DNA of 63,941 bases, the filler included, from Bigelowiella natans CCMP2755 (lineage: Eukaryota > Protista > Cercozoa): NCBI GenBank assembly GCA_000320545.1. It is 5 parts of 5 records of this genome, joined end to end, with 100 filler letters (N's around TTAATTAATTAA, not from the genome) between each part and the next. Parts side by side here need not be neighbours in the genome. Positions count along the whole stretch, not along the records: positions 43,372 to 62,782 come from ADNK01003557.1; 4 more parts are not named here. One strand, written 5' to 3'. The notes below the pieces were generated by a model, which searched no databases, had not been told where the DNA came from, and saw only the letters and a program-made list of their open reading frames with translations. Made by a program: the position numbers and the translations under genes. Positions 45,126 through 59,999 of this stretch are shown here, piece after piece (within the stretch, counting starts at the first letter, position 1; every line of letters begins with the position of its first letter).

Positions 45126-45958
45126 AAACTCGAGGCAATTAAATTGGGAGGCGACCTAAATCACACCATTCGCTCCAATGAATAAACGGCAAACCATAGC
45201 AACTACTGCGGCCAAGACGATAAAGCATAGAGGACTAAAAAAACTGCAGCCCCCTGATTATTTGAATCTCTCTCTCTCTCTCACCCAAGCCCCTTTGACC
45301 CTTTCACCCCTCACCCCTCAATGAATATCTAACAGTAGCACCTGGAACATCCCGCCTTTACAGATCGACTCGCTGTGCAAGTTTAGAATGTCATTTGTTG
45401 TATTATGCCGCACTTTCAGGTTGGTTTTCTTTCCGTCGCCTTTGGTTAAAAGCAATGAACATGGAGATGCAGCGCTAGGATGATAGATTGAAGTAGCAAT
45501 GGTGGATTTGTGGGGAAGCATTGTTGAGTTTCGACTTAAAAAGAGATTGTCACTGTCGCCTTGCAAAAAATGCAGCGAGGTGTGAGAACTGAAAGGCAAA
45601 AAAAACACGCAAACTGCAACAACCTTCCGCTTCAGTCCACTGCCGGACGCCTTGAAGCGCTTGCCCTTTTTCTTTCCACTCTTTTTTTGCCCTCGCATGG
45701 GAAGGCAGGCTTGGGGTCAGGGTTCAATTGGTGGGGGGTCATTGTGCGAGCTAGGTTCTTGGTTTTGGCGCCGAAATCGGAACTTGGCGCGGAAACAGAA
45801 AGCGCTGCCGAGTTTTTTTTGGAGTTGTGGTGCAGCAAAACGTGTGCACCACAAGTTGAATTCAATGATGTTGTTGACAACATCGGGGATTGTGCTTGCG
45901 TGCGACAACATGGCCTCTGTGACTCATGGTGACATGGCACCATGAGTCACGTTGCAAT

Positions 45959-47698
45959 TCACCGAATCGACAAATTGCCAAAGACACATGGTGTCGGAAA
46001 GTGCGCAAGCATGCATGCATTGCACACGCAAACGTGCATGACTGACACACTGGCACTGACACTGAACTTGAACAAAACCACACGCCTGGCATGCTGCCTG
46101 ATGTAAGCACGCGCTTGGTGGTCATGACCGACCACACCACTCCCCCCCCCTCCCTTCCAAGAAGAAAAATGAGGGGTCATGCCCCAAGAAACAAAAGGGC
46201 CAAAATCCACCTTCTTGCGGCTGCGTTCACCAGGTGGAATGTCACTTCGCGAAATTCGTCCCCCCTCCGTTCCAACAGATTCTGAAGAACCAGAAGAACC
46301 ATCAGAACGATCAGAAACATCATCGCTCACGTCATCCGGGGAGACTTCCTGCAGCGGAGGGAGCTCCCTGAAGGCACCATGCGGTGAGAGGCACTTGGCA
46401 TGAACATCATTTTCATGTCCCGCAGCGAGGTCAACAACAACACAAGTGTTCCCCCTCTTGCTTTTCGACACAATGGTGACCGGCCCCGTCTTGTCAACTT
46501 GGTGCTTTTTCGTCACAACATTCTGGCTTCTGTTCTCTTTGCGGTGCAACCAAACGAGGTCTCCAACCGCAAAAGAATCTTGGACGGGAAGTTTGTCATT
46601 GCGGCGGAAATTTTCCACTGGCTTGCAGTCTTCCTTGAGCGCAGCATGAAGCAAGCGAAATTTTTCAAGCCCTGGACACGTTCATCCAACTGAACCACAT
46701 CCGGCTAGCCGGGGCACCAAGACTTTCAGCATTCATGTCCGCGAGGAATCTTGGTTGATGTCCAAGTGAAAGCCTCGCGGGAGAATGTCCATTTTCATCG
46801 GTGGTGGCATTGACACCAAGTGCAACCATGTCCAGGTGCCTGTGCCAATTCTTCGCATCGTCAAGGTTCTGGAGCAGCACAGCCACAATCCCATCATTTG
46901 TGGCTCTGGGCTTGCGCCCCAGAACCGAGTTCCCTTGGCTGTTCTCAGCCGACATTTTGAGGAACTTTGGCCTCAGCCCGTTCTGCAGATGTGACATCAC
47001 ATTCCCTGCATTTTCCGGGCCCTGATCCACAAGGATCTTTTCAGGGCAACCATGCTGCAAAATGCAAGTCATGACAAAATCTGCAGTCTTGGCTGAGCTG
47101 ATTCTTTTGACAGCTCGCGCATGAATGCATCCAACAGCCATTGCACAAAGCGTCTGGATGCAATGCTTGGTCCCTTCAACAGGACCAATGGTGTCAACCG
47201 CAATGATGCCATTGAGCTCCGCATCCGCATGTTGCTGGTGAGGGGTCTGCCTCATGCGTGTCTTGGTCCGCACACACACTCGGCAGCCCCTTGCAAACTT
47301 GCGGCAATCCCGCTGCAGCCCGCTAGCCCGGGCCAACGATGAGCACGCAAAACCCGGGCAGCCAAATCATTCGCATTGCGATGATTTGACACGTTGTCAA
47401 CGTGGTGAGCCTGCATCACTTTGATGTGATCCGCAGCTGGAACACACAGCTGCAGCGGGATGCCACCGCCCACCTGGAAAGCTCCCACACGATGCAGCGC
47501 ACCATCGACGATCTTGCACCGCGACCGCACCAGTGAATGGTTGGCGCCATTTGCATCCTGCAGCGCAGCAATTGTTTTGCCAAAGTCTTGTTCTTGATGC
47601 GCCAGCTTGCATTCCGGCAACAGCGATTCCATGCGCACTTCCATCGCCCCACACTCCAACGTGGGCGCAATGCTGCACACAGATGCACAGGCCACCAC
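45959..47698 (-). pseudogene. Gypsy integrase remnant (Zn-binding, rve core, GPY/F domain), frameshifted
   Basis: IVDGALHR...QLCVP...QAHH...NH...AHRWPG, CRVCVRTK, IIAVDTIGP, HGCPEKILVDQG, NWHRHL...GHSPARLSLGHQPR, FAVGDLVWL...TGPVTIV...VHAKCLSPH, spread over three ORFs (47698-47252, 47336-46665, 46654-45959). Confidence 0.88.
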
Positions 47699-48306
47699 CA
47701 GTGCAATTAGCCAACAGACGCGCTGCTAGCTGATGCTTGTGCTTGCACGTTGATGCAATCAATGCCATTGAACACAAAACACTGAAACCCTGATGATGAA
47801 AATGCATTGTGAGCTCAAGCATGCATGCCAAACAAGCTCCCAATGGGACATTGCCGCTCGCACGCGGGTCTTTTGTCCCCCATCCATGTGCTTCATCATC
47901 AAGCCACACCAGAAGAATGCAACCATCACCTGCATGATGCCAACATGTCACATCATGCCAACGTGTTGTCTGAACCCATGTGACATCGTGCAGAAACCCC
48001 CATGCCACGCATGCAACATGCACCTCTTTGCATGCCAACGCGCATCAACACAGACAGGCCCACATGCATGCACAAACTTGTGCACAAAAGAAAACATGAT
48101 GAAAGCCAAACCTGTGCATGCCACCCAATGTGTGCATGACTTGGAAAGCCTGTCGCACTGCCCAATGCAAATGCGCAAGCATGCATGCATTGCACGTGCA
48201 AACGTGCATGACTGACACACTGGTGCCAACACCAAACTTGAACAAAACCACATGCCTAGCATGCTGCCTGATGCAAGCACGCGCTTGGTGGTCATGACCG
48301 ACCACA
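45992..48306 (-). mobile_element. Degenerate, internally deleted Ty3/gypsy element (two LTRs plus integrase), TpA-hypermutated
   Basis: Direct repeats 48306-48151 and 46136-45992 start TGTGGTCGG and end CGACA. A 4-bp TSD ATGG lies at 45988-45991 and 48307-48310, and a polypurine tract at 46141-46158 abuts the 3' LTR. No gag, RT or RNase H recognisable. Confidence 0.85.
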
Positions 48307-48666
48307 ATGGTGTTGCGTGTTCATCGTGTGCATGCAAAGTGTGGGGCGGTTGTTCCTGGCGTTGCAATGCGCATCAATTCTGGTGCACAATGTGCAGTCA
48401 ACAACAATGACAACAATTTCCCAAAGCCAAATGAAGTGCATCAGAGCAGCACGAAATGCGGCGGTCATGGCCGTGCGTCCATTTGTTCATCTCTCCTCAC
48501 CAAGATGCATGGCTTTCGTGCATGTTCGCACGTGCAGTGGTTCTCTTGACTTTTTGACAGGTGGAGTGTCAGGCCACATCCCCATTTCTTTCCATGTCGA
48601 CCTTTCCCTTTTTGGTTTCTCGGTTTTGCAGTGATGCGTCTCCTCCTGCCCTTCCTTCCTTTTTCT

Positions 48667-51600
48667 TCATTTTTTGCATTTTGACATGAGTGAGGACATC
48701 ATAGCTTTGCATTTGGAACCATCATCATGCATTTGGCAGGCAGAGTACACGTCAAGAGCCTTTTTGTGTTCCGTGATCGCCTCCGGGTACTTCCCCATGC
48801 TGTCGTACACAAGGCCGATGTTGCGGTAGCTAGTAGCCACATCCGGATGGGGTTGTTCCGTGCCGTACACCTTCAACTTCATAGCAAGACTCTTCTTGTA
48901 TTCCGTGAGCGCATCCGGGTACTTTCCCATGCTATCGTACACCCCGCCGATGTTGTTGTAGCTAGTCGCCACATCCGGATGGGGCTTCTCCGTGCCGTAC
49001 ACCTTCAACCTCATAGCAAGACTCTTCTTGTATTCCGTCAGCGCCTCCGGGTACTTCCCCATGACTTTGTACACCATGCCGATGTTGTTGTAGCTTTGAG
49101 CCACATCCGGATGGGGTTTCTCCGTGCCGTACACCTTCAACCTCATAGCAAGACTCTTCTTGTGTTCCGTCAGCGCCTCCGGGTACTTCCCCATGACTTC
49201 GTACACTCCGCCGATGTTGTTGTAGCTAGTCGCCACAGAAGGATGGGGTTGTTCCGTGCCGTACACCTTCAACCTCATAGCAAGACTCTTCTTGTATTCC
49301 GTCAGCGCCTCCGGGTACTTCCCCATGCTACGGTACACTATGCCGATGTTGTTGTAGCTAGTCGCCACATCCGGATGGGGTTGTTCCGTGCCGTACACCT
49401 TCAAATATATACCAAGACCCTTCTTGTATTCCGTGAGCGCCTCCGGGTACTTCCCCATGCTTTTGTACACTACGCCGATGTTGTTGTGGCTAATCGCCAC
49501 AGAAGGATGGGGTTTCTCCGTGCCGTACACCTTCAAATAGGTGCCAAGACTCTTCTTGTATTCCGTGAGCGCCTCCGGGTACTTCCCCATGCCATCGTAC
49601 ACAAGGCCGATGTTGTTGTAGCTACCAGCTACATACGGATGGGGTTTATCTTTACCGTACACCTTCAACCTCATACCAAGACTCTTCTTGTATTCCGTGA
49701 GCGCCTCCGGGTACTTCCCCATCCTATAGTACACTGCGCCGATGTTGTGGTAGCTACTCGCCACATCCGGATGGGGTTTCTCCGTGCCGTACACCTTCAA
49801 CCTCATAGCAAGGCTCTTCTTGTATTCCGTCAGCGCCTCCGGGTACTTCCCCATCCTATAGTACACTCCCCCGATGTTGTTGTAGCTAGTCGCCTCATCC
49901 GGATGGGGCTTCTCCGTGCCGTACACCTTCAACCTCATATCAAGACTCTTATTGAATTCCGTCAGCGCCTCCGGGTACTTCCCCATGCTATCGTACACTG
50001 TGCCGATGCTGTAGTAGATGCTAGCCATTTCTGGTACATTTTCTGTTTTTGATTCAGTAGAAACTAATGCTTTAGTTTCAGTTTCAGCGAGTTTGGCGCT
50101 TAATCTGAACCAACGTAAAGCTTTATCATAAAGGCATGCAACGGCACAGGCCTTTCCTAAAGCCCTTGCTAGCCGCCAACTGTGTTCTGCTTTGGAGGAC
50201 TTGTGCAGCGTGGTTCCGTGCTGGAGCACTGTAGCCCATTCTTCCTGGCGGTTGTGAGATTCACTATAGTCTCCTCCGTAGGCAGTCAGGGCTTCAACCA
50301 GATTTCCAATGTTAATTTGTGGCTGCAGGTACCTCACTATCTCTTGCGTGACAGCGTGCATGTTTATACAATTGGTTTCTTGGCTCCATTGTATCAAGGA
50401 ATAACGCTTTAGAAGCGCTAACGCGACGCGCACGTCTTCGTCCTCTTCAGAGACAGTCAGCTGCCCGTCATCGTTCTTTTCATCTTCCTTGCAATCCTTG
50501 ATATCCTCAACCTGATTGGGCGATTCGTCAAATTTTAGAAGAAGAACCAGTTCCAATGGAATATTTTTCGGATCCAGGTACGCGAGCGAACGCAACAACG
50601 CGAGGCAGTCCACGCACGAACTTGCAGCGGTGTGCTTGATAGCGTCCAGGTTCTAGCAGACCACTTCGACGATGCTCTGTCCGTACCTGATGCTCTTGTT
50701 GGGGTTCTTAATCAGAAACTTTTTCCTTCCTAGAGACTGCTTCTTTCGCAAATTCTCGATGCGATCTGCTACCTTGCAGTAGCCCATCTCTTTGCAGTGG
50801 CTGAAGAATTGCGCTAGGATCACGGGCATACCCGAGAACTCGGTTTTCAGGTACTCCATGCAGTCCTTCGCATCTCTGTCTTTTGGGTCGGGCATTTTTA
50901 GGCCGAATTTGCGGGCGAACTGCACCAGGTCTTCTTCATCCATGAGCCCGTCAATCGGCCAGCGTTTGACGTCCAGACTCCAATCGGTGGTTTTGCTGTT
51001 TCTAGACGTTAGGATCACGTGTCCTTTGTTCCTAGGTAAGAACTCAGCTATGTCACTGCAATCACCAACATCGTCGAACACCAGGAGGCAGCGTTCAGTC
51101 TCGATTCGTTCCCTGATGGTTTGGATAGCCGATTTGATGTCCTTTTTGTCAACAACGTGCAGGCCTGGGATGTTCTTCTCAGCGATGCGCATGTACCCGA
51201 TCTTGAGCTGCTCAGTTGTTTGGCAATCTAGCCAAAACGCGTAAGAGTATTGACCGGTCTCAATGAGGGCGTCGAACAACCGGACGGCCAACTGGCTCTT
51301 CCCAATGCCCCCATGGCCACAGAGCAGATGCACTTGTTTGCTGGTATCTTTGAGTTCATCCAAAACCTGCTTGACTACTTTCTCCCGCCCAACGAAGAAA
51401 GACACTTGGTCTGGGCCGGGGATGAGCGTCATTGAAGCTCGGAGTCTCATCTGAAATTTAATTTAAAAATGAAATGTACACACACAGATGTAAAGATCAA
51501 GTTTTAGATGCCACGCGGTTTCCTCGTGGAAAGGAGGGAAGGCAAATGGGGGATGGGTCCTGTACCGACCGAGGGGGGAGGAAAGAAAAAAATGTCGGCG

Positions 51601-54600
51601 CGTTTTTGTGTAGATGCACAATGAACTAAATGTTATGAAGATGTAAATGTACACACTGATACTCCCAAAAAACCGTACCAACCTTTTCTTTCTTATTCTC
51701 TTCCTCTATGAGCATCCCTGCAACGCGGACTAGATGCTGTTTGTCCTCAATCACCATCTTTTGGCTCCCGGGTGCCGAAGAAACAGCTGTTCTCAGCATT
51801 CGTTCCGCCAATTTTGTGCACAGAGCAGGATTGCGTACATCCTTGCCAACCTTTACGTCTGCGAACATGCATGTCCAATGGGTGTATCTGTCAACCCAAT
51901 CCGCCAACATCGACTCTAAAAAGTAACGACACCTTTGTAAAGCGTTGAAAAATGGTAAGATTTTAGGCCTTGAGTAGCAATGAACTTCGAGTGTAAATGT
52001 ATTAGAAACAGTTTCTTGAATCGCTCTTTACACAAAGGGTTCATCTCCACAGCCTGCAAGTATACGTGTCAATTACTGCTTGAACCGAAAAAAATATGAT
52101 GACAATTTTTCACAATGATTAACTCTGATAGAAGATCATTTTGTACCTTGCAACAAGGGTAATCAATTTTCTTCCTTGACGTAGTAAACAGCAATAGAGA
52201 TTTGCTGATCTTTAGAATCTGGTGAAATGCTTGCGGTCCAAGGAAATTGGATACGTTGTCGCAAATCTATAAGACAAAAATTTCACCTGGGTTCAACCTC
52301 AACACTAGACACCCTCATAACATTCATCTATTCAAACGAAAAAGGTACCAGTAAGATTCGTTTTTCTTTTTTATCTTTGAGCGAATGGAGAGGATCTCCT
52401 GCTATCAAATGGTGGCTTTTATCGGAACATGTCGTTTTTGCAACCGCCGATAAAACACCCTTTTCATCAGCAATACCGGTAAGGTCCACCTGAAGAAAAA
52501 ATGCCATAACCGTTACGAATACGCTAACAACACCTCGAACGTACATGAATTGTATTCGAATGAAATCTTGCATCCATTTTATGTGCACAGAATAAACCCA
52601 TTACATACACGCGTGCAAACATGCACGGAAAACACAATCATGACCCAATAGATAGCATCTGGCCCGTCGTTGTCATGCCACATGGACCGGGCTACCACCT
52701 CCGCCAAAACAGATTTCCCGCTACCCTTCCCACCTACGATTTGGATCCATTGAGTTGCAAACGTTTTCCTGAAAACAGCATGGTCGTTCTTTATGGAAAG
52801 CCTGCAATTTTCCAAGATTTCACGATACTGCTTCTTCACTACATCTCGTGAGAAGAAAGACCCAGGATCTGGATCTGGGATCCATCCCGTTTTGGGCTCG
52901 ATTTGTTCCAACTCCCTGAACTCGTATGTCACGTTGTGAACTTCATCGTTGTCAGTGGACCGGGGTAGAAGTATCAATTTGTCTACTTCATTCTCAGCTA
53001 AATCTGCCCAAAGGAGCTCCTCTTGTACTTCCTGATTGATGTTTTCTTCCTCGCAGAAGATCCGAAAGTCTCGTTCTACCTTCCACTTTGCATTGTATGT
53101 TGTGTATTGCGCATGCAGAGACTTGAGTTTTTCCTCGAGCTTGGCTGCGATTGATGATGGCTTGGGATGCTCCTCCAGGTAAAAAAGCGCTCGGTTTTTA
53201 CATTGTTGAGCTATCACACGGAGTCTTCGCTTGGCCTGTTCAAAAGCTTCTGATACAGAGTGCCCTTGTAGCAACCGTTGATAAAATATACCCGCAAATA
53301 CCGGGGCACCGTAATCGCTGAGTTCGTCCTTTCCTCGACAAGCTATGACGTGGCTCACTAATCCATCTTCTATGAGTTTTTTGCCTACAATCTCGCTATG
53401 GCATGCCGCTAGATACACAATCTTAGGCCGTCCATTTCGATTCCTTCTGAACATTTCCGCAAGGGCTTTTCCATCAAGGTATTTGCTGGTTTTTCCAATC
53501 GCTGGGCCACCTTCAATGCAGAGACCCTTCTCAGGATCGCCGTGCCCAGAGAAATGGAGACAAAAACAATTCGAGCCGATAGCAGTATCTATTTGCTCCT
53601 CAGTCGCACGGTAAGTCGAATACTGAAATTTGGGAAAAACTCTGATGAGTTCCCGCATCAGCTCATACTCAGTTTGGAAATCCAGTGCCTTATTGTCGGC
53701 CTCGTTTATCGGAGAAGACGATACGTACGCGATGCGGGCTGGGAGCTGCTCGGCCGATACCATTGGTTTTGCGTGTGACGGAGATTTCTAGGGGTTCAGA
53801 GAAACGTGGAAAGAAGGTCGATGTGATACAAGGAGGGAAGCCAAAACAAAGAGAGTCAGAGAGTGTTTAGACATAAACAAAGAGAAAGGGAGCGGGGGGG
53901 GGTGGGGGGTTAAAAGAGATGATCTGGCAGGGAGAATCCACGGAGATGATCATGAAAATTAGAACTAACATTTATGCTCAATTCGTTATGATAACAATAA
54001 ACAGTAACAGTTTTCGTTGGTAGTCATAGTGTTGTTAATTAATTATAATTATAATAATCATAATTTAGAATTTAGAATTGCATGGATGATGCTAAGTGCG
54101 ATTTTCCAATTGCATTTCTAAAATCGTGATGAAGCACAATATGCATTCTATGGAAGAGGGGATTTAGGGTCCAAATGCTTGCGCTTTTCTTGCTCTTACT
54201 TGCGATGAGGGTTCTCTGGTATCTGGTTTTTCGAACATTTTTTTGAGTTTTTTTACAAGAATCTTTAGTTGCATTCGTGGCCCCATCTTCTTGCATTCAA
54301 CCATCTCTTTCACGTCATCCGGGGTCATTTCCAACAGAGCCTCACCTGTGAGGTCGTTGTCCTCTATCATCTGTGGATGCCGCAACATCAGTTAAGTCTC
54401 CGTGTCATCACCGATGACGTGTTGGAATATTTATGTGCAATGAAAACTTGCGTGACTAAACACTCGGGTCTTTGCTAGTGATGTGTGTGACTTTGTCGGA
54501 GGAGGAAGGGGGGGAGATGCGGGTCAATGTTCGAACCTTAATAATGTTTGGCTTTGCTTTGAGAGCACCGGCATTCGCACGGAGCCATTGCACTAGACCC

Positions 54601-54650
54601 TCACCAGAGAAATCCTCAAACTCTTCCCTGGTCAGAGATTTGGAGTCCAT
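48667..54650 (-). CDS. NLR-like protein: SAM - CHAT (caspase-like protease) - STAND NTPase - NB-ARC-like NTPase - 42-aa TPR array; carries an in-frame TAG and one apparent frameshift or micro-intron
   Basis: Phase-consistent exons 54650-54537, 54370-54200, 53787-52645, 52566-52534, 52489-52349, 52266-52147, 52053-51933, 51915-51683, 51450-48667. SAM (VQWL...IEDNDLTGEALLEMT...KMGPRMQL); CHAT (LHFSGHG, VYLAACHS); NTPase 1 (GGKGSGKS, LLICDNV, LFTTSR); NTPase 2 (FVGRE, GHGGIGKSQLA, LLVFDDV, VILTSR); 10 TPR units. Confidence 0.88.
48760..50030 (-). repeat. Ten 126-bp coding repeats (42-aa TPR, YNNIGxVYxxMGKYPEALTEYKKSLAMRLKVYGTEKPHPDVATS)
   Basis: Directly visible near-identical tandem units. Confidence 0.95.
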
Positions 54651-55670: not shown

Positions 55671-55700
55671 ATTTTTCATCTAAAATCTAGCGATATTATA

Positions 55701-55731
<31 letters not shown>

Positions 55732-55745
55732 TCTGAACAATATTA

Positions 55746-55792
<47 letters not shown>

Positions 55793-55796
55793 TCTC

Positions 55797-55867
<71 letters not shown>

Positions 55868-55898
55868 TTTTTCACTAAAATCTAGCGATATATATTCT

Positions 55899-55941
<43 letters not shown>

Positions 55942-56000: not shown

Positions 56001-58147
56001 ATGGCGAGCCTTGTAAGTCAAATTCCTGGGACGCTCCATTTTTCTACCACGCAACACAGCTAACGCAATCCACTCTTTCAGAGAATAAAGCGACGGTCCC
56101 CCAGAGCAGCAAGAAAGCCAGGCGACCGCTTGCATTCACCCACAGCTGCAATCATTCGAAACAGAGCCAGAAATAGCCGCACGGTATGTTTGCACCTCAC
56201 GCACCCCTAGACCCACTTTCCTCGAGCCGCAACCGCTTCTTCTCAATGCAGGATGTGAGCTCGCGCTCTACAAAGGCGTCGGTCATAAAAGTCATGGTTT
56301 CTTATTGTCGGAGAAACAAACCGTTCGTACAAAAACTCGTGGCCTCGCTGGAGAAGCAAGGGTTTGGCGTCTGGGTTGACTGGAAGCGAATACCCGGCGG
56401 GGTCGACTGGTGGAAGGTACGGAGAAGCGACGATGCAATACCGCGTATGCTGTTACTCAGGCTTGTTCTCACATCTTGCTTGCAAGCTATCATATCATGA
56501 TACGAGCCATAGCCAGCACGACTTTCATTGCATCGTGTCCATATCGCCCGCCTTTTGCTGAAAAAACCTCAGGAAATTGAGAAAGGAATCTTAGACTGCA
56601 GCGTGTTTGTATTCTGCTTAAGTCCGGAAGCAATAGAATCAAAGGTACTACTATTTAACGGGATAAGGTGGTGACGATCCTAAAGTTTTTCAACGGCAAA
56701 AGGGGGAACAGACATCTTCTTAAACATTTCCGCCTCCTCCTCCTCCTCCTCCTCTTTTCGTGGACACCATACTGAGCATTTCGGGGGCTCCGACGACCCC
56801 AATTGCAGGTTTGCAATCAGGAGGTAGACTACGCGTTGGAGTGCGGAAAGCGAATCGTGCCTATCGTAGTAAAGGACGGGTTCAAATGGGACAAAGTCAG
56901 GTCAGTCTGCATCCCATTTCCCAGCGACGATTTTTGGTAGATCTAGTTTGGCGAATCATAAATCCCATCATACCCGAAAAGAGCGCCATCAGACTCCTCT
57001 TCCCCCCACAGGGCCGAAATCGCGCGCATCAACTTCATTTTCTTCACTGGCGACAACGAGTATACGGAAAGATACAAGCAGCTCGTCTCTGTCATCAGTA
57101 CGTTAAACCCGTTTGCTTTCCGGCCGCAATACACCCAGAAATCCGTGCCGAACGCCCACTCACGCCACGACGCATTAGCGCGCGCGTGATCGTAATGGTA
57201 CTGATTCTCACTCTGCTGCTGCTGCTATGGCTGCTTTCTCCTCGTCCGTCGTCGTCGTTGTCAGAAATAAACCCCGAGCATGTTTCAACGCACACTGAGC
57301 TGCAACGCCAAGCGATGAATTGGGAGGCCAATGAATGCGCTCCTGGTAAGTGAAGAGCCTGCTGCTGAGTCAGAAAACCGCCCATAAGCATCTTACGAGC
57401 TCCGCCGCGGATTTCAATAGTCCTCTTGTTGATGACGAGTAGTTTTGAGTGCAGCCCTCTCTGACTACATCGCGCCCTGTTTGTCTGTTCTCGATAGAAT
57501 TGCTGCTGCGCGGCGTGGCCCTCGTCCACGCTTCAAACTGGATCTTGGAGGCGCAAACCAACTACACAAACCCTGAGCCAACCGATTTGCAATGCAGGTG
57601 TAACAGCTGTGGGGGTTGGCTCGGAGCGTTGGCGCGCTCGCGATTATCGTCCACCATCCACCCAAAACCGTGCTAATACAAGGGCGCTTCCCTGCTGCTG
57701 TGTTAGGTTCATTATGAACGCTCATTTAGAGGAGGCTATGGCGAGAAGGAAGGTCAGGAAGAACAGCCCACATTCCGCTCGTTTTGACACTTATCCACTG
57801 AGACGACGTGTTTCCCGCAGTCAATGGTGCTGCATCAGCTCATGCATTTTGGCGACCAAAGCCCGGCATTTGGAGAAGCTCTTCCACAGGCGAATGCGAG
57901 AGAATCCAACAGCTCGAGGGGGGCGGGGGGTGTGGACAAAGCAGCTTTAAATGCCACCAACAGCTCTACTAGTCCCCCCCCAGCCGTCACTTCGAGGTCG
58001 GAGAGGTCTGAGAGGAAGAAGCAAGTTGTTTTTGATTTGACAAGCGAAGTCGGCAATAATACGCCGCGGCGGAGTGAAGGAACGGCATCTGATATAAGGA
58101 CGAGTGATATAGCCCTCCAGGTTTCGAGAAGGTTTGTTGCGACGTGA
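56001..58147 (+). CDS. TIR-domain (TIR_2-type) protein, 9 exons
   Basis: Exons 56001-56012, 56252-56416, 56573-56644, 56809-56900, 57012-57097, 57265-57345, 57498-57597, 57707-57752, 57821-58147 splice in phase: VMVSYCRRNKPFVQKL...GFGVWVDWKRIPGGVDWWK|EIEKGILDCSVFVFCLSPEAIESK|VCNQEVDYALECGKRIVPIV...HTELQRQAMNW...LLLRGVALVHASNWI...PEPTDLQCRFI. Confidence 0.9.
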
Positions 58148-58457
58148 GAAGCCCGCTCTTTGAAATCGCAGTCACATTAAAATAATAAAATCCGAATAGT
58201 CTTCGCTATAAATCCATATCGTTGTATTTCCCCTTTCGTTTCTTATCCTTGATTTACCACTTCTTCAACTTATACGTCAATGGGTACGGAATCGATTGGT
58301 AGAATCTTCCTCGCTGTGTCCCCAAATCGCTAGTTCAAATAGTATCCTGCAGCTTTGCACAGCGTGCAGCCAGTTTCAATATCTCCCTCCCTCCCCCCCG
58401 CCCTTACTCCAATCCCCAATCCGATGTAGGCGAAGTCAGGAAGATAGTAAATCTGTG

Positions 58458-59999
58458 ATGTCGGAGAGCACTGAAATACGGAGCAGCGAGGAAACCGCCC
58501 TTCCGAGAGGCTCTTCGCTATTCCAGCTTCGCGGACGTTTGCAGGCCTTCACAAGCACGGAGAGCTACATGCAAAAGCTGCTGGTTTACATAATGCTGCA
58601 CATCCTCGTCGCAATCCTGGTCCCGCTGCTGGCGTGCCAACCCACAACGATCGTCACGACAGTTATCGCAGGATTCTCGCTAGCACTGTCGTCGATTGCT
58701 CTCCTCGAGCTCCTCTTCGAGCTGTTTATCTACCAAGAGGCCTTCATCTGCAGCTCTACATTCGTGGCCGATTTCGTCGTTGTCTCCGCGCGGTTGGTGC
58801 TGGAAGTGCTGTACTTCAGTGGTTGGCAATCGGCGCTGTCGAAGCAGCTTTTTGCCTTCACCCTCCTGCGGTTTTGCCGCGTGTTCGGAATTCTCCATAC
58901 GAAGTACAAGAGCATGCTGGGAGAGAAAAACCAGGACGCCGCCTTACTGGTAGAGACGACTGGGGAGGCGTTTCGGCTTCGCCGGATGATAAGGGACCTG
59001 AAGTACAAGAACAAACAGCTGCAGAAGAAGCTCAAACGCGCGAAGTCGGGGAGGAAGGGAAAGTCGCAGTCCAACATCGTCACGCACCAAGGCACCCTCG
59101 AAGGAAGCATGAAGATAAAATCCCGGGGGCTCATGGGTACATTCTTATGGGCAGAGCGCTTCTTCATCCTTGACCGGCGCTCCCCCGAACACCCGACGCT
59201 CACGTTCTACAAGAGTTCCGCGGATGCGATTGTGAATTCGCAGGGGGAGGCGAAAATCGACTTCGCAACTGTGCAGGGGATCAAAGTTAAGAAGAGCAAC
59301 CGCAAAAAGCTCTTAATCGTCATTTCCCGCCGCGACGACGCGCCATTCGAGATCACCGCGAAAACAGAGGCAGAGGCCTCGGAATGGAGCAAAGCGATGA
59401 GGGAGGTCTTGGACGAAATGCGCCGGAAAGAGGAAGAAACCCACAGCATGGCTGAGAAATCGTACAACATGATCAAAAGCACGCTAGTCCCCGAGGAGGT
59501 GAAGAAGATAAAGGAAAAGAAGGTCATGTCCAAAAAGGAGACGATTTCGATCATTGAAAGCATGCACAGCAAGAATGAGAAAAGACGCGCGGCGCGGGAC
59601 CGAGCTGCGACGTATGCTGCCCCCCCCCTCGAGCGCAAGTCTGAAGAAAAAGACACGCAGGCAACAAGGGGCCGCGCTGCTACGTCCATTAAGCGATCAT
59701 CGACGAAAACCACACCAGCAACCTCGCCGGCAGCAATGATGACCCTTGGAGAATCAGCCGCTTTTAACATTGGAAAGTCAAATACAACAGCGCCGAAGAA
59801 CTCCAACTCCTCGGATCCCATGGGAATGGTAAGTCCGCTAAGGCGATATGTCACGTCGGAGCAGAATCCTACGGTTTCATCATTTCGGGTGTCCTCGGCG
59901 ACAGAGGCAACTTCTTCCTCACGGCTGGCCAACTCGCCGCATGCAAATGCGGCTGCTAAGAACCCTATCAAAGGGAAAAAGATCGATGCTGTGGATTGA
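58458..59999 (+). CDS. Voltage-sensor-like 4-TM domain, coiled coil and PH domain protein (single exon)
   Basis: Four hydrophobic segments with S2 LLELLFELF, S3 VADFVVV and S4 LLRFCRVFGI; heptad region LRRMIRDLKYKNKQLQKKL; PH pattern LEGSMKIK...WAERFFIL...LTFYKS...FEITAKTEAEASEWSKAM. The ORF is open from 58296; first Met at 58458. Confidence 0.75.
   Translation: MSESTEIRSSEETALPRGSSLFQLRGRLQAFTSTESYMQKLLVYIMLHILVAILVPLLACQPTTIVTTVIAGFSLALSSIALLELLFELFIYQEAFICSSTFVADFVVVSARLVLEVLYFSGWQSALSKQLFAFTLLRFCRVFGILHTKYKSMLGEKNQDAALLVETTGEAFRLRRMIRDLKYKNKQLQKKLKRAKSGRKGKSQSNIVTHQGTLEGSMKIKSRGLMGTFLWAERFFILDRRSPEHPTLTFYKSSADAIVNSQGEAKIDFATVQGIKVKKSNRKKLLIVISRRDDAPFEITAKTEAEASEWSKAMREVLDEMRRKEEETHSMAEKSYNMIKSTLVPEEVKKIKEKKVMSKKETISIIESMHSKNEKRRAARDRAATYAAPPLERKSEEKDTQATRGRAATSIKRSSTKTTPATSPAAMMTLGESAAFNIGKSNTTAPKNSNSSDPMGMVSPLRRYVTSEQNPTVSSFRVSSATEATSSSRLANSPHANAAAKNPIKGKKIDAVD

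What the first reader, a model, noticed from the sequence alone, without database searches (positions are those of the whole stretch)
48667..54650. SAM-CHAT-STAND-STAND-TPR: an NLR-like receptor with a caspase-like effector and two NTPase modules
Seen: an intact CHAT His/Cys dyad (HFSGHG, LAACHS), two separate P-loop/Walker-B/sensor sets, an N-terminal SAM and C-terminal TPRs in one phase-consistent exon chain. Known: effector-STAND-TPR proteins act in non-self recognition in fungi and antiphage defence in bacteria, and CHAT proteases trigger cell death, but one NTPase module is the rule. Inference: a sensor-executor fused in one chain, possibly by capture of an NB-ARC-TPR unit (the whole unit is a single intronless 2.8-kb exon, unlike the intron-rich 5' half).
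Basis: partly seen in the sequence, partly recalled or inferred. Interest (0 to 1): 0.8.

Follow-up and report, generated by a model that had tools for sequence, protein, structure and literature searches.

The report
Protease-armed NLR-like gene, two NTPase modules

Summary
On the minus strand, 54650 to 48667, eight GT-AG exons join in phase into 1589 codons. In order they encode a weak SAM-like domain, a CHAT protease with its His177/Cys224 dyad, NTPase module 1, an NB-ARC, a winged helix and ten 44-residue TPRs.

It lies between the NB-ARC and its winged helix, so this copy as assembled would make a sensor-less 927-residue protein.

Module 1 is homologous to the NB-ARC nucleotide-binding domain (hhalign 96%) but has no winged helix, so it is not a full second STAND.

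The closest proteins are Bigelowiella natans gene models. Transcripts from a relative confirm six of the seven junctions. They put the CHAT and NB-ARC parts on one RNA, though with the last intron retained. In a paralogue the same N-terminal module runs in one ORF into a NACHT-WD40 unit.

CHAT-NOD-repeat proteins and tandem NB-ARC receptors are already known. I rate this a new variant of a known kind, probably a recently broken allele.

The parts
54537..54650 (-). Exon 1: start codon and first half of the SAM-like domain.
   Evidence: ATG at 54650 and donor AAG|GT. The start and the 1/2 junction match the relative transcript L005.
54200..54370 (-). Exon 2: second half of the SAM-like domain.
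   Evidence: Pfam SAM_1 E 0.0012, below the cut-off. Weak matches to SAM domains of solved structures.
52645..53787 (-). Exon 3: CHAT protease (His177 in HFSGHG at 53556-53539; Cys224 in LAACHS at 53412-53395), a helical middle region, and Walker A of NTPase module 1 (GGKGSGKS at 52734-52711).
   Evidence: Pfam CHAT E 1.9e-7. His and Cys are invariant in 40 sequences. AlphaFold model pLDDT 79.5. Best solved-structure match is SAVED-CHAT 8tl0, E 1e-11.
52349..52489 (-). Exon 4: NTPase module 1, from strand 2 up to the start of Walker B (..KRILL).
   Evidence: GT-AG and phase 0. The 3/4 junction is spliced in L005 and the 4/5 junction in L001 and L002.
52147..52266 (-). Exon 5: NTPase module 1, Walker B (ICDN) and sensor 1 (TTSR).
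   Evidence: hhalign of module 1 against the NB-ARC gives 96% probability, E 3.8e-9, from the P-loop to sensor 1.
51933..52053 (-). Exon 6: start of the helical domain of module 1. It ends in phase 1.
   Evidence: The 5/6 and 6/7 junctions are spliced in L005 (HFSTLYNDKKVGKD).
51683..51858 (-). Exon 7: end of the helical domain of module 1 (NPALCTKLAERM) and the linker.
   Evidence: The donor GAAAAG|GT is conserved in L005.
51451..51682 (-). Intron 7 (232 nt), the link between the CHAT half and the NB-ARC-TPR half.
   Evidence: Against L005 it is 55% identical with 57 gap positions. The flanking exons are 77% and 85% identical with no gaps. It is retained in L005, L006 and L007.
50656..51450 (-). 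Exon 8, first part: NB-ARC nucleotide-binding and helical domains (GHGGIGKS, LLVFDD, ILTSRN, GMPVILAQ).
   Evidence: Pfam NB-ARC E 9.5e-15. NCBIfam FxSxx_TPR positions 3-144. It is 81% identical to P0152.
50653..50655 (-). In-frame TAG (codon 928).
   Evidence: No workable intron spans it.
50026..50652 (-). Exon 8, middle part: winged helix with an MHD-like His (NMHAVTQ at 50364-50344) and the linker to the TPRs.
   Evidence: Pfam DUF7779 E 2.9e-5. Together with the first TPR units, this part is colinear with FxSxx_TPR positions 249-637.
48667..50025 (-). Exon 8, last part: ten 44-residue TPR units, a short tail and the TGA stop.
   Evidence: TPR_12 E 1.7e-120. 132-nt period, 9.6 copies, 88% matches, no indels. 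Variable positions are 2, 5, 9, 12 and 13.

Best explanation
**What it is.** This is one member of a chlorarachniophyte family of NLR-like (STAND) receptor genes, in a Bigelowiella natans-like genome. The effector is fused to the receptor.

**The encoded chain, in order:**
- a SAM-like domain;
- a CHAT cysteine protease of the caspase fold;
- a helical spacer;
- module 1, a nucleotide-binding domain plus helical lid related to NB-ARC, with no winged helix;
- a complete bacterial-type NB-ARC with winged helix;
- ten TPRs.

**Proposed mechanism (inferred by analogy, not shown).**
- The TPR array binds a ligand on its concave face.
- This releases the winged-helix/MHD lock on the NB-ARC and allows ADP-to-ATP exchange and oligomerisation.
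- Oligomerisation brings the N-terminal CHAT domains together and activates them by proximity or filament formation, as in the apoptosome and in SAVED-CHAT.
- The outcome would be proteolysis of downstream targets and cell death or defence.
- Module 1 has an intact Walker A but a D-N Walker B in this copy. It would act as a second, hydrolysis-poor nucleotide-binding tier or adaptor that couples the protease to whichever sensor unit follows it.
- The SAM-like domain would add self-association.

**State of this copy.** It carries one in-frame TAG between the NB-ARC lid and the winged helix. As assembled, it would give a 927-residue protein without the lock and the sensor.
- Everything else is intact, so the stop is most likely a very recent or polymorphic null allele.
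- A base-call error is the other possibility.
For: **Shown**
- An 8-exon GT-AG in-phase model with a single internal stop.
- Domain matches above curated cut-offs for CHAT, NB-ARC and TPR.
- An invariant His/Cys dyad.
- A CHAT fold closest to SAVED-CHAT 8tl0: E 1e-11, rmsd 2.4 over about 180 residues.
- Module 1 is homologous to the NB-ARC domain (hhalign 96%) and under purifying selection (dN/dS 0.09-0.25).
- Six of seven junctions are spliced in relatives' transcripts.
- Both halves lie on one RNA in L005, L006 and L007.
- At intron 7, conservation and the absence of indels begin exactly at the predicted donor and acceptor. In L005 exon 8 starts with ACA, not ATG.
- Paralogue L002 has the same N-terminal module and module 1 in one ORF with an NPHP3_N/NACHT domain and WD40.
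- Exon 8 is colinear with a single NB-ARC-TPR family model on both sides of the TAG.
- NB-ARC dN/dS is 0.21.
- TPR variation is concentrated at positions 2, 5, 9, 12 and 13, with pN/pS 1.65 against 0.42 elsewhere.
- The closest proteins are B. natans models.

**From the literature**
- CHAT is a frequent N-terminal domain of NLR-like proteins in multicellular bacteria (bioRxiv 10.1101/2020.01.06.895854).
Against: - The TAG means no full-length protein can be made from this sequence as it stands.
- The exon 7/8 junction was never seen spliced, and exon 8 here begins with ATG, so a separate NB-ARC-TPR product is conceivable.
- No transcript of this exact copy was found.
- Close relatives are damaged:
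  - L005 has a roughly 270-nt frame-shifting deletion of the winged helix and no TPRs.
  - P0001 and P0002 have lost their Tyr codons, and P0002 is partly read in a frame different from the window's CHAT frame.
- SAM is below threshold.
- The module 1 structure model is of low confidence (pLDDT 53.6).
- No function has been tested for any family member.
Confidence: 0.68

Rival explanations
1. Two products rather than one chain. A SAM-CHAT-module 1 protein would end by read-through into intron 7. A separately made NB-ARC(-TPR) protein would start at the ATG at 51450.
For: - Exon 8 starts with ATG.
- Intron 7 is retained in all three related contigs, from two samples. That gives a stop after module 1 and a 264-residue NB-ARC ORF labelled 'complete' by its source.
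Against: - The splice signals, phase 0/0 and indel-free conservation start exactly at the acceptor.
- L005 has ACA instead of ATG at that codon.
- Both parts sit on the same RNA.
- In L002 the equivalent join is one open frame.
- A downstream ORF on a eukaryotic mRNA would rarely be translated (general knowledge).
Confidence: 0.2
2. A dead pseudogene of a decaying family. On this reading the domain order is a relic and nothing here functions.
For: - The in-frame TAG.
- Damaged relatives.
- A TpA-stripped, transposon-like block begins right after the stop codon.
- No transcript of this copy was found.
Against: - There is only one lesion in 1589 codons.
- All 14 splice sites are canonical.
- The 661 codons after the TAG are open.
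- The TPR array has no indels.
- dN/dS is about 0.2.
- TpA observed/expected in the gene is normal at 0.69, against 0.04-0.16 next door.
Confidence: 0.25
3. The TAG is an assembly or base-call error and the gene is fully intact.
For: - It is a single substitution in an otherwise clean 4.8-kb reading frame.
- The flanks show purifying selection.
Against: - Nothing in the sequence marks the site as low quality.
- NLR-type families commonly carry null alleles (general knowledge).
- This could not be tested without reads.
Confidence: 0.25

Closest known systems
All-in-one CHAT-NOD-repeat NLR-like proteins of multicellular bacteria, and fungal NLRs.
   Same: - An N-terminal caspase-like CHAT effector, a central NB-ARC or NACHT, and C-terminal TPR or WD40 repeats in one chain (bioRxiv 10.1101/2020.01.06.895854).
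- Exon 8 matches the bacterial NB-ARC-TPR model FxSxx_TPR.
- The repeats are highly similar to one another and vary at a few positions.
   Different: - The host is a rhizarian alga.
- The 5' half is rich in introns.
- There is an extra SAM-like domain.
- An additional nucleotide-binding module lies between the protease and the NOD.
SAVED-CHAT protease (PDB 8tl0).
   Same: It is the best structural match of the protease domain: E 1e-11, 26-28% identity, rmsd 2.4-2.7. The structure is an activated filament.
   Different: Its sensor is a SAVED domain, not a STAND-TPR. It is a bacterial defence protein with no NTPase.
Apaf-1/caspase-9 apoptosome.
   Same: The working logic is shared: a repeat sensor, an NB-ARC switch, and proximity activation of a caspase-fold protease.
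   Different: In the apoptosome the protease is a separate protein recruited through CARD. In this gene it is fused, there is no CARD, and the repeats are TPRs rather than WD40.
Plant NLRs with tandem NB-ARC domains, such as wheat WTN1.
   Same: Two nucleotide-binding modules in one receptor chain (bioRxiv 10.1101/2024.08.30.610185).
   Different: The plant proteins have LRR sensors and CC-type N-termini. In this gene the first module lacks a winged helix, and the second can be either NB-ARC or NACHT within the family.
SARM1 (from memory, not tested).
   Same: A SAM domain joined to a death or defence effector, where SAM drives oligomerisation.
   Different: SARM1 has tandem, well-defined SAM domains and a TIR effector, and no NTPase.

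Membership tests
NB-ARC / STAND NTPase (module 2, exon 8) | Walker A, Walker B and sensor 1 (RNBS-B) motifs, a helical lid with a GLPL-like motif, and a Pfam score above the cut-off. | tested here: met
   GHGGIGKS, LLVFDD, ILTSRN and GMPVILAQ are present. PF00931 gives E 9.5e-15, 55 bits against a 23.5-bit cut-off.
NB-ARC / STAND NTPase (module 2, exon 8) | A winged helix with an MHD-type His, contiguous with the nucleotide-binding domain in one open frame. | tested here: not met
   The winged helix (DUF7779 E 2.9e-5; NMHAVTQ) is present, but it is separated from the lid by the in-frame TAG at 50655-50653.
STAND NTPase (module 1) | A nucleotide-binding domain homologous to NB-ARC or NACHT, with Walker A, Walker B and sensor 1. 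| tested here: met
   hhalign against the NB-ARC alignment gives 96% probability, E 3.8e-9. GGKGSGKS, LLICDN and TTSR are present. Pfam matches in relatives are only weak: AAA_22 1.7e-4, NB-ARC 0.017, NACHT 0.008-0.05.
STAND NTPase (module 1) | The full NBD-HD1-WHD core. | tested here: not met
   About 100 helical residues follow sensor 1, and then the second module begins. No winged helix is present. The structure model is of low confidence.
CHAT (PF12770), clan CD cysteine proteases | A caspase-like fold with a His-Cys catalytic dyad. | tested here: met
   31.3 bits against a 24-bit cut-off. His177 and Cys224 are invariant in 40 sequences. Fold matches include SAVED-CHAT, DdvA, Csx29, separase, MALT1 and caspases.
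CHAT (PF12770), clan CD cysteine proteases | Proteolytic activity. | not testable with these tools
   This needs an enzyme assay.
SAM domain (PF00536) | A score above the curated cut-off, or a clear five-helix SAM fold. | tested here: inconclusive
   Exon 2 alone scores 19.6 bits against a 23-bit cut-off. A profile of relatives finds mostly SAM domains in the PDB, but at E 0.016 to 1.
TPR repeats (TPR_12 / TPR_10) | Repeated helix-turn-helix units with the TPR consensus. | tested here: met
   E 1.7e-120. Ten 44-residue units have consensus residues at TPR positions 4, 7, 8, 11, 20, 24 and 27.
NLR-like tripartite receptor (effector-NOD-repeats in one polypeptide) | All three parts translated as one chain. 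| tested here: inconclusive
   The exon chain is in phase and both halves are on one RNA in relatives. However, junction 7/8 was not seen spliced, and the TAG interrupts the frame.
NCBIfam NF040586 FxSxx-COOH system TPR protein | A whole-protein score above 300 bits (equivalog cut-off). | tested here: not met
   The two pieces on either side of the TAG score 84 and 267 bits. This is the nearest bacterial model, and the gene is not a member.

The most novel reading that the evidence does not exclude
Chlorarachniophytes may hold a family of two-tier NLR-like receptors. A conserved SAM-CHAT-NBD1 executioner-adaptor would be combined, by exon-level swapping or gene conversion, with interchangeable complete STAND sensor units (NB-ARC-TPR or NACHT-WD40). 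NBD1 would form a second nucleotide-dependent ring or filament that is needed to fire the protease. That would be a receptor design not described for plant, animal, fungal or bacterial NLRs.
Probability: 0.3. Interest if true: 0.75.

Novelty: new variant of a known kind. Interest (0 to 1): 0.55.

Why it matters
NLR-like receptors are well studied in plants, animals, fungi and bacteria. My paper searches found nothing on them for Bigelowiella or other Rhizaria.

This family shows a protease effector fused directly to the receptor, an extra conserved nucleotide-binding module, and at least two different sensor units behind the same N-terminal module.

- It gives a concrete case for studying how sensor units are exchanged.
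- It lets one ask whether a second nucleotide-binding tier changes activation.
- It points to caspase-fold-mediated regulated cell death or antiviral defence in a marine alga already known to carry integrated giant-virus DNA and a TpA-targeted hypermutation process.
- Paralogues of this gene carry that hypermutation signature, which links two putative defence layers in one genome.

Tried and rejected
**Ways to explain away the TAG**
- The only GT..AG span around it is 34 nt and out of phase.
- The 269 nt that are missing in L005 have no AG acceptor in the window and would shift the frame. They are a deletion in L005, not an intron.
- I first thought the TAG replaced a conserved Trp of a TTWE motif. 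A MAFFT alignment with P0153 to P0155 places the stop opposite Glu, Gln or Tyr, not opposite the Trp of that motif, so the original codon is unknown.

**Searches that found nothing**
- Full-length kin of the winged-helix region among proteins of 363-1157 residues.
- Metagenome contigs: none with the NB-ARC piece, and with the N-module alignment only L004, a contig already fetched as L001.
- Viral contigs.
- Exact look-ups of the window's ORFs and of P0001 and P0002.
- PDB sequence search with the CHAT exon.
- PADLOC gave only a generic TPR match for the gene.

**Low-value or unavailable results**
- The structure model of module 1 was of low confidence. It matched AAA+ and STAND proteins alike, so it was used only as weak support.
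- An alignment of the TA-poor 3' end of L005 to the window in a purine/pyrimidine alphabet scored only marginally above shuffles.
- One alignment was too diverse for the search for related loci.

Full report
**1. What is in the sequence**

The piece is eukaryotic DNA. Three-frame translation of the minus strand between 54800 and 48500 gives a series of open segments. I joined them through canonical sites into eight exons:

| Exon | Coordinates (minus strand) |
|---|---|
| 1 | 54650-54537 |
| 2 | 54370-54200 |
| 3 | 53787-52645 |
| 4 | 52489-52349 |
| 5 | 52266-52147 |
| 6 | 52053-51933 |
| 7 | 51858-51683 |
| 8 | 51450-48667 |

- Every intron is GT..AG. Intron lengths are 166, 412, 155, 82, 93, 74 and 232 nt.
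- The joined CDS is 4770 nt, or 1589 codons, and ends in TGA.
- It contains exactly one internal stop, a TAG at codon 928 (50655-50653).
- No usable intron removes it. The only GT..AG span around it is 34 nt and out of phase.

**2. Domains**

- *Pfam.* SAM_1 is marginal (E 0.0012, below the cut-off, exon 2 only). CHAT has E 1.9e-7, NB-ARC 9.5e-15 and TPR_12 1.7e-120, all above their cut-offs. A winged-helix family (DUF7779, E 2.9e-5) lies just after the TAG.
In a 40-sequence alignment of this domain with distant CHAT proteins, the only invariant residues are an Ala, His177 (HFSGHG) and Cys224 (LAACHS).
- *CHAT fold.* An AlphaFold model from that alignment has mean pLDDT 79.5, and above 90 over most of the protease core. 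Its best solved-structure match is the activated SAVED-CHAT filament 8tl0 (E 1e-11, 26-28% identity, rmsd 2.4-2.7). DdvA, Csx29, separase, MALT1, legumain and caspases follow.
- *SAM.* A profile of the N-termini of relatives finds mostly SAM domains in the PDB, but only at E 0.016 to 1. SAM stays a plausible, unproven label.

**3. The two NTPase modules**

- *Module 2* is a standard NB-ARC with GHGGIGKS, LLVFDD, ILTSRN and GMPVILAQ. After the TAG come a winged helix and an MHD-like NMHAVTQ.
- *Module 1* spans the end of exon 3 through exon 7.
  - It has GGKGSGKS, LLICDN and TTSR, then about 100 helical residues including NPALCTKLAERM.
  - Pfam does not recognise it in the window. In relatives it gives only weak AAA_22, NACHT and NB-ARC matches.
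  - A profile-profile comparison of a five-sequence alignment of module 1 with an alignment of the NB-ARC gives 96% probability (E 3.8e-9), from the P-loop to sensor 1.
  - Its dN/dS against relatives is 0.09-0.25.
  - A structure model of a relative's module 1 was of low confidence (pLDDT 53.6). It matched AAA+ and STAND proteins alike, including Sr35, ZAR1, CED-4, Apaf-1 and ORC/Cdc6. I use this only as weak support.
- *Reading.* Module 1 is a real, conserved nucleotide-binding domain with a lid, related to NB-ARC, but it has no winged helix. "Two NTPase modules" is correct. "Two STAND modules" overstates it.
- *Walker B.* It is D-N here, D-D in P0004 and D-G in P0006. From general knowledge of these ATPases, that suggests nucleotide binding with weak hydrolysis. 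This is inference.

**4. Relatives, and what they say about the gene model**

An exhaustive protein search with exon 3 found five close relatives. Three are Bigelowiella natans JGI models:

- P0001, Bigna1 137400, 84% identical;
- P0002, Bigna1 145316, 92% identical;
- P0006, Bigna1 89319, 34% identical.

The window is therefore from B. natans or a very close chlorarachniophyte.

The other relatives come from JGI samples whose contigs read as spliced mRNA.

- The window protein aligns colinearly to L005 across junctions 1/2, 2/3, 3/4, 5/6 and 6/7.
- It aligns to L001 and L002 across junction 4/5.
- Six of the seven junctions and the start codon are thus confirmed by relatives' mRNAs.
- L005, L006 and L007 (two samples) carry SAM-CHAT-module 1 and an NB-ARC that is 81% identical to the window's, on the same RNA. 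Introns 4 and 7 are retained.

The exon 7/8 junction is therefore not directly observed. In its favour:

- The donor GAAAAG|GT and the acceptor ..TCAG| are conserved.
- Identity is 77% and 85% without gaps in the flanking exons, against 55% with 57 gap positions in the intron.
- The change happens exactly at the predicted sites.
- In L005 the first codon of exon 8 is ACA, not ATG.

**5. The double module is a family trait, and the sensor unit varies**

- L002 and L003, from the same sample as L005, encode the same N-terminal SAM-like region, CHAT and module 1.
- After one retained intron, a single open frame runs from the lid of module 1 into an NPHP3_N/NACHT-type P-loop domain (E 4.7e-23), a TANC1-like winged helix and the first WD40 repeat.
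- The family thus couples one conserved N-terminal module to at least two kinds of complete STAND-repeat units.

Three further observations fit swapping or conversion of the 3' unit:

- Exon 8 is intronless and colinear, on both sides of the TAG, with the bacterial NB-ARC-TPR model FxSxx_TPR. Positions 3-144 score E 7.7e-24 and positions 249-637 score E 3.3e-79.
- Its nearest hits outside the family, P0153 and P0154, carry TIR_2 and NB-ARC Pfam domains and are 26-28% identical.
- Synonymous divergence between the window and L005 is mosaic: about 1.7 or saturated in CHAT and the spacer, 1.1 in the second half of module 1, 0.55 in NB-ARC and 0.34 after it.
- In a tree of the N-terminal module, the window groups with P0001 and then weakly (83/84) with the NACHT-type L002, not with the NB-ARC-type L005.

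The support is modest, so I treat swapping as likely, not shown.

**6. The TPR sensor**

- There are ten 44-residue units: a 132-nt period, 9.6 copies, 88% matches and no indels.
- Variation among units concentrates at positions 2, 5, 9, 12 and 13. At those positions pN/pS among units is 1.65, against 0.42 elsewhere.
- The positions were picked from the same data, so this is descriptive.
- As I recall from TPR structural work, they coincide with the ligand-facing positions of helix A.
- Highly similar repeats with a few variable positions are also typical of fungal NLR repeats (I did not open the fungal NLR survey, PMC4986451, listed).

**7. State of this copy**

- The TAG falls between the NB-ARC lid and the winged helix. 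The product as assembled would lack the MHD lock and the sensor.
- Everything else is intact: all 14 splice sites, 661 open codons after the stop, an indel-free repeat array and an NB-ARC dN/dS of 0.21.
- The lesion is therefore recent or polymorphic, or it is an error. I could not tell which without reads.
- Relatives are also damaged:
  - L005 has a roughly 270-nt frame-shifting deletion that removes the winged helix, and no TPRs.
  - P0002 is partly read in a frame different from the window's CHAT frame.
  - P0001 has lost all its Tyr codons.
- This birth-and-death pattern is common in NLR-type families (general knowledge).

**8. Comparison and verdict**

- CHAT as the N-terminal effector of NOD-repeat proteins is known in multicellular bacteria.
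- A CHAT protease is implicated in fungal heterokaryon incompatibility (PMC11138114).
- Tandem NB-ARC receptors are known in plants.
- I found no paper on NLR-like genes in Bigelowiella.

What is new is the host lineage, the conserved extra nucleotide-binding module, the SAM-like N-terminus and the alternative sensor units. I rate it a new variant of a known kind, of moderate interest. The mechanism I give is inferred by analogy with the apoptosome and SAVED-CHAT. Nothing functional is shown.

Noticed in passing
window 45540-48700: - A 3.1-kb block that starts right after the gene's stop codon has only 7 TpA dinucleotides, where about 180 are expected.
- Observed/expected is 0.04-0.16 for TpA, 1.6 for CpA and 1.8 for TpG.
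- The gene itself has TpA observed/expected of 0.69.
- This matches the TpA-targeted T/A-to-C/G hypermutation and the TpA-depleted clusters reported for Bigelowiella natans (bioRxiv 10.64898/2026.01.13.699255).
   Followed up: partly
proteins P0001 (Bigna1 137400) and P0002 (Bigna1 145316), paralogues of the window's exon 3: - P0001 has no Tyr in 486 residues. All 13 aligned window Tyr are Cys (8) or His (5).
- In P0002, 5 of 6 aligned Tyr are changed in the same way.
- The more distant relatives keep Tyr, so these copies are the derived ones.
- In the tree, P0001's branch is 0.16 against 0.014 for the window.
- Duplicates of a host-type gene thus carry the TpA-stripping signature, not only viral or transposon DNA.
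- TpA-free DNA has no TAA or TAG stops, which may explain why gene models are called there.
   Followed up: partly
window 46665-47336 and 45959-46654 (minus strand): Two long ORFs lie inside the TpA-free block. By eye they resemble a retroelement integrase whose Tyr positions now read Cys or His. Pfam finds nothing, so this is an impression and not a result.
   Followed up: partly
window 56186-56937 (+): A small TIR-domain gene lies head-to-head with the NLR-like gene, about 1.5 kb from its start. TIR_2 scores E 1.5e-8 on the first exon, and there are weak PADLOC TIR matches. It may be part of a defence-gene neighbourhood.
   Followed up: partly
window 58296-59999 (+): A long ORF with a PH domain (E 9e-7) and, by eye, hydrophobic N-terminal stretches. 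It has no evident link to the finding.
   Followed up: no
L005 3350-3580: The relative's transcript ends in a TA-poor, CA/TG-rich stretch (TpA observed/expected 0.21) where the TPRs should be. This copy may have been truncated by, or next to, hypermutated DNA.
   Followed up: partly
window 55700-55900: TA, CA and GA microsatellites lie in the shared upstream region between the NLR-like gene and the TIR gene. A CA/TG microsatellite also fills the retained intron of L002.
   Followed up: no
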